Shown here: piece after piece, positions 54,802 to 55,388 of the stretch
Layout of the letters: every line of letters starts with the position of its first letter
How positions within the stretch are numbered: the first letter of the stretch is position 1
Made by a program: the position numbers and the translations under genes
IMG/VR virus record: IMGVR_UViG_3300044701_002789
Location: 1 to 64,000 of that record
Strand: one strand, 5' to 3'
Length of the DNA stretch: 64,000 bases
The notes under the pieces: model-generated
What the model was told of the DNA's origin: nothing
Seen by the model: the letters and a program-made list of their open reading frames with translations, nothing else
Databases searched by the model: none

Positions 54802-54920
54802 AGCCGAAGCCGGGATTCGAACCCGGTCCTTTTCTTTGGCAGAGAATTGTTAGAGTAATTGCTGTCTGTATCTTTTACAAGATAACCGCTTTTTTAATGC
54901 TACCATTACACCACTTCGGC
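54802..54920 (-). ncRNA. tRNA-Gly(GCC)-like RNA with a ~48-nt CAGCAA-module insertion after the D-arm
   Basis: GCCGAAG/CTTCGGC acceptor stem, D-arm, CCGGG-TTCGAAT-CCCGG T-arm; insert TAAAAAAGCGGTTATCTT-GTAA-AAGATACAGACAGCAATT. Confidence 0.8.
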
Positions 54921-54925
54921 GGGTC

Positions 54926-54978
54926 AAGATGAGTTTTTGGAATCGAACCAAGAGATCCTAAGATTGCTGCCTCATCTT
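54926..54978 (-). ncRNA. free CAGCAA-module hairpin with a T-arm mimic
   Basis: AAGATGAG-GCAGCAAT..TTGG-TTCGATT-CCAA-AAA-CTCATCTT. Confidence 0.7.
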
Positions 54979-54982
54979 TAAG

Positions 54983-55094
54983 AGGGGAGGGTAAGAATTG
55001 AACTTACGACGGACTGTTTTAGTATTTTGCTGTTAACATCAATTAACTCGATGTATTTATTAGACGGTTGCTCTACCAATTGAGCTACCTCCCC
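54983..55094 (-). ncRNA. tRNA-like RNA with the CAGCAA module replacing the anticodon loop
   Basis: GGGGAGG/CCTCCCC, canonical D- and T-arms; ACATCGA-GTTAA-TTGATGT-TAACAGCAAAA. Confidence 0.75.
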
Positions 55095-55100
55095 GGAGAC

Positions 55101-55154
55101 TAGATAGTTTTTTATGGTCGTTTTGGAATAAACGGTAAATTGCTGAACTATCTA
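55101..55154 (-). ncRNA. free CAGCAA-module hairpin
   Basis: TAGATAGTT-CAGCAATT...AAAA-AACTATCTA. Confidence 0.75.
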
Positions 55155-55158
55155 TAAG

Positions 55159-55243
55159 CGGAGAAGATAAGAGTCGAACTTATTAGGTGCGATGCTGACT
55201 TATCTAAATCTAGATAATCTCCGGTCCCCCAGAGAACTTCCCC
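55159..55243 (-). ncRNA. degenerate tRNA-like RNA with a CAGCAT module
   Basis: GGGGAAG/CTTCTCC, ATAAG-TTCGACT-CTTAT T-arm; TTATCTA-GATT-TAGATAA-GTCAGCAT. Confidence 0.65.
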
Positions 55244-55268
55244 ATAAAACAGACAGAGAACTGTCTGA

Positions 55269-55388
55269 CGCCGAGACTAGGATTCGAACCTAGAACACCT
55301 CCTTAACATGGATTAATAGAATTGCTGTCTGTATCTTTTTCAAGATAACCGATTTTTTAAGCGTTTTATCCAATTAAACTATCTCGGC
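55269..55388 (-). ncRNA. tRNA-Asn(GTT)-like RNA with the CAGCAA-module insertion after the D-arm
   Basis: GCCGAGA/TCTCGGC; insert nearly identical to the one at 54802..54920. Confidence 0.8.

What the first reader, a model, noticed from the sequence alone, without database searches (positions are those of the whole stretch)
54802..55388. The CAGCAA module is circularly permuted and grafted into four different tRNA scaffolds
In the tRNA-like copies the order is A-rich strand, stem, short loop, stem, CAGCAA. This is the same junction as the free hairpins, but closed from the other side, with the tRNA body taking the place of the variable loop. Two copies (Gly-GCC-like 54802-54920 and Asn-GTT-like 55269-55388) carry a nearly identical ~42-nt insert, TTAAAAAA(G/T)CGGTTATCTTG(T/A)AAAAGATACAGACAGCAATT, at the same position between the D-arm and the anticodon arm. 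A third (54983-55094) has the module in place of the anticodon loop, and a fourth (55159-55243) is degenerate. Normal Gly(GCC) and Asn(GTT) tRNAs exist elsewhere in the array, so these copies are probably not needed for decoding. They may be tagged tRNA mimics or non-canonical tRNA introns.
Basis: partly seen in the sequence, partly recalled or inferred. Interest (0 to 1): 0.88.

Follow-up and report, generated by a model that had tools for sequence, protein, structure and literature searches.

The report
Phage Ro-like protein's tRNA-mimic RNAs
The odd "tRNAs with a 42-base insert" and the CAGCAA hairpins between them are small non-coding RNAs that belong with the neighbouring gene for a Ro60-shaped RNA-binding protein; this is a phage relative of the Ro/Y-RNA particle, it recurs in many phages and bacteria, and its RNA partner does not seem to have been described.

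Summary
On the minus strand, 54802-55445 carries four tRNA-like genes, each with an embedded A-rich/hairpin/CAGCAA module. They alternate with three free hairpins carrying the same module in the opposite closure. Both helices covary across relatives.

These are not introns or decayed tRNAs. The adjacent ORF (55495-56973, DUF2828+DUF7788) folds as a Ro60 ring: its top nine PDB matches are all Ro60. The motif stem-(N)A-CAGCAA...A-rich-stem lies beside this gene family, on the gene's strand, in 9/9 cyanophage relatives, in seven distant isolated phages (one, Vibrio ValKK3, has only a 5'UTR CAGCAA) and in 128 of 152 distant phage and genome loci. That is 397 hits, against 40 on the other strand and about 31 in shuffles.

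In distant relatives the RNA has YrlA (bacterial Y RNA) topology and matches Rfam YrlA below threshold. Circularly permuting the window's Gly-like RNA aligns it end to end with the coliphage version.

Best reading: these are Y-RNA-like tRNA mimics whose module docks the Ro-like protein. Binding and function are inferred, not shown. This is a new variant of a known kind, and of high interest.

The parts
55452..55480 (-). Sigma-70-type promoter (TTGACA-17-TAAAAT, TG-extended) that drives the small-RNA array. Transcription would start at about the first base of free hairpin a.
   Evidence: 11 of 12 matches. The same GGGGGTTGACA...TAAGAT element stands at the same place in L059, L120 and phage B3.
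55393..55445 (-). Free module hairpin a: UAGAUGGUU-CAGCAAUU-[small variable hairpin]-AAAAA-CCAUCUAG.
   Evidence: CM R1 58.4 bits, E 3e-9; alignment A2 and covariation; fold.
55269..55388 (-). tRNA-like RNA 'Asn*', with anticodon loop AUGUUAA. The module hairpin (about 55318-55358) splits the 5' strand of the anticodon stem (CU|UCC pairs with GGAGG).
   Evidence: Rfam tRNA 45.4 bits; 7/7 acceptor, 5/5 T stem, D arm intact; orthologues in L120 and L059 with compensatory acceptor changes.
55250..55267 (-). Terminator-like hairpin (CAGACAG UUCU CUGUCUG UUUU) between Asn* and the degenerate tRNA-like RNA. Conserved in L059 and L120.
55159..55243 (-). Reduced tRNA-like RNA: acceptor stem, T arm and a module hairpin (UUAUCUA GAUU UAGAUAA) followed by CAGCAU. 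It has no D arm and no anticodon arm.
   Evidence: orthologues in L059 and L120, where the core reads CUGCA.
55100..55155 (-). Free module hairpin b.
   Evidence: CM R1 58.8 bits, E 2.6e-9.
54983..55094 (-). tRNA-like RNA 'X*'. The acceptor, D and T arms and the anticodon stem (ACCGU/ACAGU, with a conserved C-A mismatch) are intact. The anticodon loop is replaced by A-rich strand / hairpin / CAGCAA (about 55023-55063).
   Evidence: Rfam tRNA 50.2 bits with a 42-nt insert in the loop; fold z = -3.4; orthologues L059 8727-8838 and L101 982-1096.
54925..54979 (-). Free module hairpin c. Its interior is a T-arm-like hairpin (UUGG UUCGAUU CCAA). Larger versions in L053 and L108 add a closed acceptor-like hairpin.
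   Evidence: CM R1 47.2 bits.
54802..54920 (-). tRNA-like RNA 'Gly*': anticodon loop CUGCCAA, discriminator U, with the module hairpin (about 54855-54895) between the D stem and the anticodon stem. It is a circular permutation of the YrlA-topology RNA of coliphage garuso and of L147, L148 and L164.
   Evidence: The permuted alignment scores 122 against 71.5 unpermuted and 59.5 +/- 5.4 shuffled.
55495..56973 (-). Gene for a 492-aa Ro60-fold protein (helical TROVE-like ring plus a vWA domain with an intact MIDAS motif, DVSGS). Pfam assigns DUF2828 + DUF7788.
   Evidence: Pfam. AF2 model pLDDT 90, pTM 0.90. The top nine Foldseek PDB hits are all Ro60, aligned over full length, TM 0.31-0.57 (0.44-0.57 for the top eight). 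Homologues are annotated 'Ro-like RNA binding protein' in mycobacteriophages.
56984..57037 (-). Free module hairpin e in the 5' UTR of the Ro-like gene. Its 3' strand ends 1 nt before the GGAG Shine-Dalgarno sequence, so it is a candidate autoregulatory site.
   Evidence: CM R1 55.2 bits. The same position is kept in L013, L029, L101, L108, L120 and B3. A CAGCAA motif also lies in the 5' UTR in Vibrio phage ValKK3.
57041..57101 (-). Free module hairpin d, between tRNA-Val and hairpin e.
   Evidence: CM R1 47.6 bits.
57119..57251 (-). Promoter (57223-57251) and normal tRNA-Val(UAC) (57119-57190) that head the transcription unit containing hairpins d and e and the Ro-like gene.
61256..61310 (-). 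Free module hairpin f, inside the main tRNA array. In relatives it abuts the 3' end of a tRNA.
   Evidence: CM R1 59.5 bits.

Best explanation
The region is an operon of Y-RNA-like small RNAs that partner the Ro60-fold protein encoded immediately upstream on the same strand.

The 'CAGCAA module' has three parts: a helix with conserved AGAU/AUCU pairs, a single-stranded (N)A-CAGCAA-UU strand 3' of one arm, and an A-rich strand 5' of the other arm. I read this module as the docking site for that protein. It would play the role that the conserved stem with the GNCGAA/CGAA bulge plays for canonical Ro60/Rsr.

The module serves as a handle attached to different cargoes:
- a short variable hairpin (the free hairpins);
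- a T-arm mini-domain (hairpin c);
- a whole tRNA-like body.

In most lineages the RNA ends lie in the module stem and the tRNA acceptor stem is capped. That is the YrlA topology. In this cyanophage lineage the RNA is circularly permuted: the ends lie in the acceptor stem, as in a real tRNA, and the module stem is capped by a loop.

A likely consequence is that host RNase P and RNase Z cut the polycistronic transcript at each tRNA-like body, which would also release the interleaved free hairpins. This is inferred from the 1-4 nt spacing between them.

The resulting particles (Ro-like ring plus tRNA mimic) most plausibly act in tRNA/RNA quality control or repair, or as tRNA decoys or tethers during infection. 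They sit in or next to the phage's tRNA array. Hairpin e, at the gene's ribosome-binding site, probably lets the protein repress its own translation.

What is shown and what is inferred:
- Shown: the structures, their covariation, the fold of the protein, and the genomic association across hundreds of loci.
- Inferred: physical binding, processing, and physiological role.
For: 1. Protein. DUF2828+DUF7788. The AF2 model is confident (pLDDT 90, pTM 0.90). Its nine best PDB matches are all Ro60 (Xenopus, human, Thermus phage phiLo), aligned over 517-577 columns with TM 0.31-0.57 and E 1e-7 to 2e-5. After those come only isolated vWA domains.

2. Association in close relatives. In 9/9 cyanophage relatives with the gene, module RNAs flank it on the same strand.

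3. Association in distant isolates. The same motif flanks the gene in mycobacteriophage BigCheese, Listeria phage A511, coliphage garuso, an Enterococcus phage, a Campylobacter phage and Synechococcus phage BUCT-ZZ01. In Vibrio phage ValKK3 only a CAGCAA in the 5' UTR was seen.

4. Association in 72 distant IMG/VR loci (40-47% protein identity). 136 hits on the gene strand outside the gene, 29 on the opposite strand, 18.5 in shuffles. ACAGCAA occurs 190 versus 19 times. Hits peak within 250 nt upstream of the start codon.

5. Association in 80 bacterial and archaeal genome loci. 76 have hits: 261 on the gene strand, 11 on the opposite strand, 12.4 in shuffles.

6. RNA structure. Both closures of the module covary. 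The CM finds the free form only in the tRNA/Ro-like region of the window, and finds it in phage B3, which was not used for training.

7. Link to Y RNAs. Rfam YrlA (RF02553) matches the capped-acceptor versions in L164, L146, L127 and L148 at 32-50 bits, E down to 2e-8, over the full model. The permuted window Gly* aligns end to end with these RNAs, about 10-12 sd above shuffles.

8. Selection on the tRNA body but not on decoding. The acceptor, T and D arms are intact in about 21 copies, while anticodon triplets differ among orthologues.

9. Precedent. Bacterial and phage Ro60 genes have tRNA-like Y RNAs within 4 kb on the same strand (PMC4201824). Phage phiLo Ro60 binds two adjacent Y-like RNAs (PMC12135203).
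Against: - No binding, expression or processing data exist for this protein family or these RNAs. The docking role of the module rests on co-occurrence and on analogy.
- The protein has no detectable sequence similarity to Ro60: there is no Pfam TROVE hit and no PDB sequence hit. TM scores of about 0.5 indicate the same fold with a considerable rearrangement.
- The canonical Ro-binding motif GNCGAAN0-1G is absent.
- The window's own RNAs do not hit the Rfam YrlA model.
- In the Thr-like and Asn* scaffolds, exact removal of the insert would restore a perfect 5-bp anticodon stem. That is also what an intron would look like.
- 20 of 72 distant phage loci had no descriptor hit. The descriptor was strict and the flanks were short, but some family members may lack the RNA.
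Confidence: 0.78

Rival explanations
1. The inserts are non-canonical tRNA introns. They are excised by a phage or host endonuclease and ligase to give functional extra Gly, Asn and other tRNAs.
For: - Removing the insert restores a regular 5-bp anticodon stem in some scaffolds: ACG|GC pairs with GCCGU in the Thr-like class, and CU|UCC with GGAGG in Asn*.
- The anticodon loops are 7 nt long, mostly with U33.
- The Gly* scaffold keeps U73, G1-C72, C2-G71 and anticodon GCC.
- Some phages of this protein family encode RtcB nearby, for example A511.
Against: - The insert position differs among scaffolds: 26/27, 28-30, or inside the loop.
- I saw no bulge-helix-bulge or other common splice-site structure.
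- Anticodons differ between orthologues that share the same acceptor stem: GCA versus CCA; UGU, UGG, UCU and UCG; GCC versus ACGGUAA, which lacks U33.
- The X* class has no anticodon at all.
- The identical module occurs free, and it forms the RNA termini in most lineages.
- Normal isoacceptors are already present.
Confidence: 0.06
2. The tRNA-like genes are real decoding tRNAs that keep the module as an extra arm, that is, unspliced and tagged but translationally active.
For: All elements needed for RNase P, RNase Z, CCA addition and possibly aminoacylation are intact. The window copies carry sensible anticodons, GCC and GUU.
Against: - Anticodon triplets are not conserved among orthologues.
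- A ~25-nt hairpin at position 26-30 sits where ribosomal A- and P-site contacts occur. This point rests on established tRNA-ribosome structure knowledge and was not tested here.
- The X* and degenerate classes lack an anticodon loop.
- The same RNA exists with a capped acceptor stem in other phages, and that form cannot be charged.
Confidence: 0.05
3. A miniature mobile element (a MITE- or REP-like palindrome) has inserted at the DNA level into tRNA genes and intergenic DNA, leaving pseudogenes. This matches the annotation in phage B3 ('tRNA-Pseudo-GCA').
For: The element is multi-copy and palindromic, and it lies in a region that also holds an HNH endonuclease gene. The two window inserts are nearly identical (39/41).
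Against: - No target-site duplications are visible.
- Copies are strand-specific: all lie on the gene's strand, with ratios of 136:29 and 261:11.
- Helices show compensatory changes rather than decay.
- The scaffolds are conserved as orthologous sets with intact arms.
- The array has its own strong promoter.
- The element is tied to one protein family across phyla, and the window has no copies outside the tRNA/Ro-like region.
Confidence: 0.04
4. The hairpins are only transcription terminators or RNase processing signals of the tRNA operon, with no protein partner of their own.
For: Several free hairpins are followed by U-rich tracts (CCAUCUAGUUUU). They lie between tRNA-like genes.
Against: - The invariant single-stranded CAGCAA and the A-rich strand are not features of terminators.
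- The stems are AU-rich, and the scan's only terminator-like site on this strand within the RNA array was a separate hairpin at 55250-55267.
- The motif also sits inside tRNA bodies and in the gene's 5' UTR.
- Conservation of the motif alongside one protein family from Actinobacteria phages to Clostridia is not explained.
Confidence: 0.04

Closest known systems
Bacterial and phage Y RNAs of the YrlA type with Ro60/Rsr (Chen et al. 2014, PMC4201824; Rfam RF02553)
   Same: - A small RNA is encoded within about 1 kb of, and on the same strand as, a Ro60-fold (helical ring + vWA) protein gene.
- A 5'/3' stem is followed by a conserved single-stranded motif.
- There is a tRNA-like domain with T and D arms.
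- Several paralogous RNAs occur per locus.
- In distant members of this family the order is T arm, capped acceptor, D arm. This is the YrlA order, and it matches RF02553 at 32-50 bits.
   Different: - The protein belongs to a different sequence family (DUF2828/DUF7788, no TROVE hit).
- The conserved RNA motif is (N)A-CAGCAA opposite an A-run, not GNCGAAN0-1G.
- Copy number is much higher: 10 module RNAs in this window, and at least 10 in tandem in some Clostridia loci.
- In this phage the RNA is circularly permuted to true tRNA topology, with open acceptor ends and, in three of the four scaffolds, an anticodon arm.
- The window RNAs score nothing against RF02553.
Thermus phage phiLo Ro60 with Yrl1/Yrl2 (PMC12135203; PDB 9KOP, 9L5Y)
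   Same: A phage-encoded Ro60-fold protein has Y-like RNAs encoded beside the gene. 9KOP is among the top structural matches of the window protein (TM 0.50).
   Different: phiLo Ro60 is a recognisable TROVE protein. Its RNAs carry the CGAA bulge and no tRNA body in tRNA topology. Binding is demonstrated there and not here.
Non-canonical tRNA introns and permuted tRNA genes of Archaea and red algae (bulge-helix-bulge splicing). From my own knowledge; not tested here.
   Same: There are short (~40 nt) insertions at positions such as 26/27 or 29/30 of tRNA genes, and circular permutation of tRNA-related RNAs.
   Different: I saw no BHB motif. The module is also free-standing. No splicing endonuclease is known in these hosts. 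Anticodons are not conserved. The permutation here is between orthologous RNAs of different phages, not a processing pathway.
T4 'species 1 and 2' stable RNAs in the tRNA cluster. From my own knowledge.
   Same: Small stable non-tRNA RNAs are interleaved with tRNAs in a T4-like phage and are presumably released by tRNA-processing enzymes.
   Different: No sequence or motif relationship was tested or seen, and no Ro-like partner is known for them.

Membership tests
Ro60/Rsr (TROVE + vWA) protein family | Ring-shaped HEAT-like helical TROVE domain closed by a C-terminal vWA domain | tested here: met
   AF2 model pLDDT 90, pTM 0.90. The top nine Foldseek PDB hits are all Ro60, aligned over full length, TM 0.31-0.57 (top eight 0.44-0.57), prob 1.0.
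Ro60/Rsr (TROVE + vWA) protein family | Sequence membership in Pfam TROVE (PF05731), or significant sequence similarity to solved Ro60 proteins | tested here: not met
   Pfam gives only DUF2828 + DUF7788. phmmer and profile searches of PDB sequences find no Ro60.
Ro60/Rsr (TROVE + vWA) protein family | Intact MIDAS motif in the vWA domain | tested here: met
   D294, S296, S298, T360 and D392 are invariant in 50 sequences.
YrlA-type Y RNA (Rfam RF02553) | Encoded within 4 kb of the Ro60-type gene on the same strand | tested here: met
   The window RNAs lie 11-700 nt from the gene, on the same strand. The same holds in 9/9 close relatives and 128/152 distant loci.
YrlA-type Y RNA (Rfam RF02553) | tRNA-like domain with conserved T and D arms | tested here: met
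YrlA-type Y RNA (Rfam RF02553) | Topology: the RNA ends form the Ro-binding stem, and the order is T arm, capped acceptor-like stem, D arm | tested here: not met
   The window RNAs have the tRNA order with open acceptor ends. The YrlA order is found in distant relatives (garuso, L127, L146, L148, L164). The window RNA matches them only after circular permutation.
YrlA-type Y RNA (Rfam RF02553) | GNCGAAN0-1G motif near the 5' end | tested here: not met
   It is replaced by (N)A-CAGCAA. The motif definition is from PMC4201824.
YrlA-type Y RNA (Rfam RF02553) | Reaches the Rfam gathering score (69 bits) | tested here: not met
   No hit in the window. Relatives score 32-50 bits.
YrlA-type Y RNA (Rfam RF02553) | Physically bound by the Ro60-type protein | not testable with these tools
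   Needs EMSA, RIP or a structure.
tRNA (decoding) | Cloverleaf with acceptor, D, anticodon and T arms | tested here: met
   Met for three of the four window copies (Rfam 45-50 bits for two; manual parse for Gly*). The fourth lacks the D and anticodon arms.
tRNA (decoding) | Anticodon conserved among orthologues and matched to the acceptor identity | tested here: not met
   Triplets differ among orthologous scaffolds. The X* class has none.
BHB-type tRNA intron | Bulge-helix-bulge motif at the exon-intron junctions, and a constant relation of the cut sites to the mature tRNA | tested here: inconclusive
   Reading the junctions by eye showed no common 3-4-3 bulge-helix-bulge, and the junction positions vary. 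No dedicated BHB search was run.

The most novel reading that the evidence does not exclude
DUF2828/DUF7788 proteins and the 'CAGCAA-handle' RNAs form a second, undescribed and very widespread Ro/Y-RNA-type ribonucleoprotein system. It occurs in phages and mobile elements, with over 7000 protein clusters at 50% identity.

In this system one protein-docking handle is fused to tRNA-like cargoes in at least three topologies:
- the ends lie in the handle stem, around a permuted tRNA-like body with a capped acceptor;
- the handle stem closes a tRNA-like body in native order at the acceptor end;
- in cyanophages, the handle is inserted as a hairpin in a processable, possibly CCA-tailed tRNA.

The variable anticodon loops on conserved bodies would then be the working end. 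They could serve as decoys for, or sensors of, host anticodon nucleases and other tRNA-targeting defences, with the Ro-like ring recruiting exonucleases or repair enzymes.
Probability: 0.3. Interest if true: 0.9.

Novelty: new variant of a known kind. Interest (0 to 1): 0.8.

Why it matters
- It assigns a likely RNA partner, and hence a testable function, to a very large protein family annotated only as 'hypothetical', 'vWFA' or 'Ro-like'. The family was found in 711 phage records, including FelixO1-like, Listeria A511/P100-like, Staphylococcus, Campylobacter, Vibrio and mycobacterial phages used in the laboratory and in biocontrol.
- It explains recurrent 'pseudo-tRNA' and missed-tRNA calls next to phage tRNA arrays.
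- It gives a natural example of an RNA circularly permuted between lineages while keeping both its protein handle and its tRNA-like body. That is strong comparative evidence for how the particle is built.
- It extends the puzzling link between Ro60, tRNA mimicry and RNA repair to a much larger set of genetically tractable phage-host pairs.

Tried and rejected
- Megablast of the region against isolated phages found no close relative; it matched only an epimerase gene.
- ARAGORN in default mode misses all four tRNA-like genes. With introns allowed it assigns inconsistent anticodons, because it forces the insert into the anticodon loop.
- Rfam, at both gathering and permissive thresholds, has no family for the module in the window. 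A RAGATH-27 hit at 24.6 bits (E 0.68) is noise.
- Sequence searches of the PDB with the protein and with its profile found no Ro60. Only the fold comparison did.
- The exact-pattern scan of IMG/VR returned mostly chance matches. Filtering for the complementary 3' arm kept 12 of 120 loci.
- The cyanophage-trained CM R1 does not detect the distant versions, whose stem sequences differ. I used a simple stem/CAGCAA/stem descriptor with strand and shuffle controls instead.
- I asked whether the scaffolds are recent copies of the phage's own Gly and Asn tRNAs. They are not.
- I considered IS200/REP-like DNA hairpins, MotA-box-like promoter elements and self-cleaving ribozymes. I saw no consensus match, and the strand-specific, protein-linked distribution argues against the DNA-level ideas.
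- The supplementary tables of Chen et al. 2014 and two Wolin reviews were not available. I therefore could not check whether any DUF2828 phage was in their list.
- Seven literature searches found no description of RNAs associated with DUF2828 or 'Ro-like' phage proteins. The library does not cover most subscription journals.
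Full report
**What is there**

The window is a T4-like cyanophage segment. It has a PhotoRC-II motif, a glutamine riboswitch and a group I intron. No close isolate exists in the phage collection. The nearest is Synechococcus phage B3, at 73% identity for the key protein.

Everything relevant lies on the minus strand. 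Reading 5' to 3' from 55480:
- a strong sigma-70-type promoter, TTGACA-17-TAAAAT;
- free hairpin a (55445-55393);
- a tRNA-like gene with an Asn-type anticodon loop (55388-55269);
- a terminator-like hairpin;
- a reduced tRNA-like gene (55243-55159);
- free hairpin b (55155-55100);
- a tRNA-like gene whose anticodon loop is replaced (55094-54983);
- free hairpin c (54979-54925);
- a tRNA-like gene with a Gly-type loop (54920-54802).

The Gly-like and Asn-like copies share a 41-nt insert that differs at two positions. Rfam's tRNA model accepts two of the four genes only by opening 42-58-nt insertions. ARAGORN misses all four. Ordinary Gly-GCC and Asn-GUU tRNAs are present in the 29-gene array further along the strand.

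**The module is real and is the same thing in both closures**

Thirty free copies from this phage and its relatives align cleanly. The outer stem is 97% paired, and five of nine pairs change on both sides. Slid controls give 34-45% pairing.

Twenty-one embedded copies align as A-run / hairpin / CAGCAAUU. The hairpin is 92% paired, with five of seven pairs covarying.

In both forms the strand that runs into CAGCAA reads AGAU plus four or five bases, and its partner reads AUCU preceded by the A-run. The G-C pair and the neighbouring A-U pairs are invariant. So the free hairpin and the embedded hairpin are one two-helix junction, capped on one side or the other.

A covariance model of the free form finds exactly six copies in 64 kb, all on this strand and all in the tRNA/Ro-like region. 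It also finds five copies in phage B3, which was not used in training.

**The neighbouring gene is the key**

Directly upstream on the same strand is a 492-residue ORF (56973-55495). It is preceded by two more free hairpins. One of these ends one base before the Shine-Dalgarno sequence.

- Pfam gives DUF2828 plus DUF7788, with an intact MIDAS motif.
- Sequence searches do not reach any solved structure.
- A confident AlphaFold model (pLDDT 90, pTM 0.90) has as its nine best PDB matches only Ro60 proteins: Xenopus, human and the Thermus phage phiLo homologue. These align over the full length with TM 0.31-0.57. After them come only isolated vWA domains.
- Homologues in mycobacteriophages are already annotated 'Ro-like RNA binding protein'.

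Canonical Ro60/Rsr genes in bacteria and phages are accompanied, within 4 kb on the same strand, by Y RNAs. These Y RNAs have a terminal stem, a conserved single-stranded motif (GNCGAA) and a tRNA-like domain (PMC4201824; PMC12135203).

**The association is general**

All nine cyanophage relatives that carry the gene have the same layout. In B3 the embedded form is annotated 'tRNA-Pseudo-GCA'.

Much more distant homologues, at 35-42% identity, have the same motif in the intergenic DNA next to the gene on its strand: a stem, one to three bases ending in A, CAGCAA, a variable interior, an A-run, then the stem complement. This holds in mycobacteriophage BigCheese, Listeria phage A511, coliphage garuso (FelixO1-like), an Enterococcus phage, a Campylobacter phage and Synechococcus phage BUCT-ZZ01. 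In Vibrio phage ValKK3 only a CAGCAA in the 5' UTR was seen.

I tested this with a simple descriptor on two sets of distant loci:

| Set | Loci with a hit | Gene strand | Opposite strand | Shuffled flanks |
|---|---|---|---|---|
| 72 IMG/VR loci (40-47% protein identity) | 52 | 136 | 29 | 18.5 |
| 80 bacterial and archaeal genome loci | 76 | 261 | 11 | 12.4 |

In the IMG/VR set the hits are concentrated within a few hundred bases of the gene. In the genome set there are tandem arrays of up to ten or more copies upstream of the gene. The protein family is very large, with 7157 clusters at 50% identity.

**Circular permutation at the level of the whole RNA**

In the distant lineages the longer RNAs contain a T arm, a capped acceptor-like hairpin and a D arm, sometimes preceded by an anticodon arm. 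The RNA's own ends form the module stem. That is the YrlA topology.

Rfam's YrlA model matches several of them over its full length at 32-50 bits, with E down to 2e-8. This is below the curated threshold of 69 bits.

I took the window's Gly-like RNA, cut it in the module loop and joined it at the acceptor ends. It then aligns end to end with two of these RNAs:
- the coliphage garuso RNA: score 122, against 71.5 unpermuted and 59.5 +/- 5.4 for shuffles;
- L147: score 114.5, against 54.9 +/- 6.1 for shuffles.

Shared blocks include GGUGUAAUGGUAGCA and CAGCAAUU..CUAAC.AUUCUC. So the cyanophage tRNA-topology RNAs are circular permutations of a Y-like RNA that is widespread beside this protein.

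A third arrangement also occurs, in which the module stem closes a tRNA-like body in native order (L216, L217).

**Why not introns, decoding tRNAs or mobile debris**

- The insert lies at 26/27 in the Gly-like class, within the 5' strand of the anticodon stem in the Asn-like and Thr-like classes, and in the loop in the X class.
- Orthologous scaffolds with the same acceptor stem carry different triplets: GCA or CCA; UGU, UGG, UCU or UCG; GCC, or a loop without U33.
- Where gene boundaries were set correctly (16 of about 21 copies), the acceptor stem is 7/7 paired and the D stem 3-4/4 paired. All 21 keep 5/5 T stems, 20 of 21 have a UUCRANU T loop, and the D loops carry GG. Compensatory changes are present. 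The body is therefore selected and the codon-reading function is not.
- The scaffolds are not recent copies of the phage's own tRNAs.
- Strand specificity, covariation, a dedicated promoter and the link to one protein family argue against a mobile DNA element or simple terminators.
- One point does favour an intron-like origin. Deleting the insert restores a perfect anticodon stem in two classes. This is equally expected for a three-way junction built into a former tRNA.

**Proposed mechanism**

Shown:
- the RNA structures;
- the Ro60 fold of the neighbouring protein;
- the co-inheritance of the two across phyla.

Inferred:
- The module is the docking site of the Ro-like ring, analogous to the conserved stem and bulge of Y RNAs.
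- The tRNA-topology bodies are cut out by RNase P and RNase Z. Because only 1-4 nt separate neighbours, this also liberates the interleaved hairpins.
- Hairpin e lets the protein repress its own translation.
- The particle acts on tRNA or RNA quality control or repair, or as a tRNA decoy or tether.

Three context observations fit the last point. The locus sits in or beside tRNA arrays in many phages. An RNase T-like exonuclease gene lies 1 kb away here. RtcB lies nearby in A511.

**Novelty**

Ro60/Y-RNA systems, including phage ones, are known. The 'Ro-like' label for this protein family is in use.

I found no description of the associated RNAs, of the CAGCAA handle, or of the permuted tRNA-topology form, either in Rfam 15 or in seven literature searches. 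The library lacks most subscription journals, and two reviews could not be read.

I classify this as a new variant of a known kind.

Noticed in passing
window 62104-62224 (-): A fifth interrupted tRNA, of a different kind. It is a Val(UAC)-like gene (Rfam 53.8 bits) with a 47-nt insert in the anticodon loop and no CAGCAA module. In the MFE fold the insert pairs with the anticodon region. It is conserved in L074 and L105, which are near-identical to the window over the stretches read. A normal tRNA-Val(UAC) exists at 57119-57190.
   Followed up: partly
window 57961-58482 (-) and 57279-57749 (-): An RNase T / Rv2179c-like 3'-5' exoribonuclease gene and an HNH endonuclease gene sit inside the tRNA array, 1 kb and 0.3 kb upstream of the Ro-like transcription unit. 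Canonical Ro60 works with 3'-5' exoribonucleases, so the exonuclease may be functionally linked.
   Followed up: no
window 61850-62470 (-): Several tRNAs in the array are preceded by promoter-like TTGAC(A/T) boxes embedded in short palindromes, e.g. TTGACAATCTGGTATAAATACCATACGATTGTC and CTTGACTTTTTTCCAAAAAAGTCTTATAAATA. This is a repeated hairpin-promoter design.
   Followed up: no
window 40219-40421 (-), 41454-41545 (-), 29355-29403 (-): A group I intron (80.7 bits), a PhotoRC-II motif and a glutamine riboswitch. These are typical cyanomyovirus RNA elements and help identify the source.
   Followed up: no
L124 (Listeria phage A511) 5342-6509; L123 (mycobacteriophage BigCheese) 3460-3730: A511 has an RtcB 'tRNA splicing ligase' gene 1.3 kb downstream of its Ro-like gene. 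BigCheese has three module RNAs in a 370-nt unannotated gap after gp55. The cluster L homologue LeBron gp53 is reported as toxic when overexpressed in M. smegmatis (PMC13148394).
   Followed up: partly
L218 880-1990; L216 590-700; L217 1866-1975: Clostridia MAG loci carry tandem arrays of ten or more module RNAs upstream of the gene. Some hold a tRNA-like body in native order (D arm, anticodon arm, T arm) enclosed by the module stem. This is a third topology.
   Followed up: partly
L121 (Synechococcus phage B3) 5251-5303, 5479-5530, 5369-5478: Core variants of the motif occur: CAGCCA and CUGCAA in B3, CCGCAA in L006, and CAGCAU in the window's degenerate copy. Only the GCA of the core is strictly kept in this clade.
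   Followed up: no
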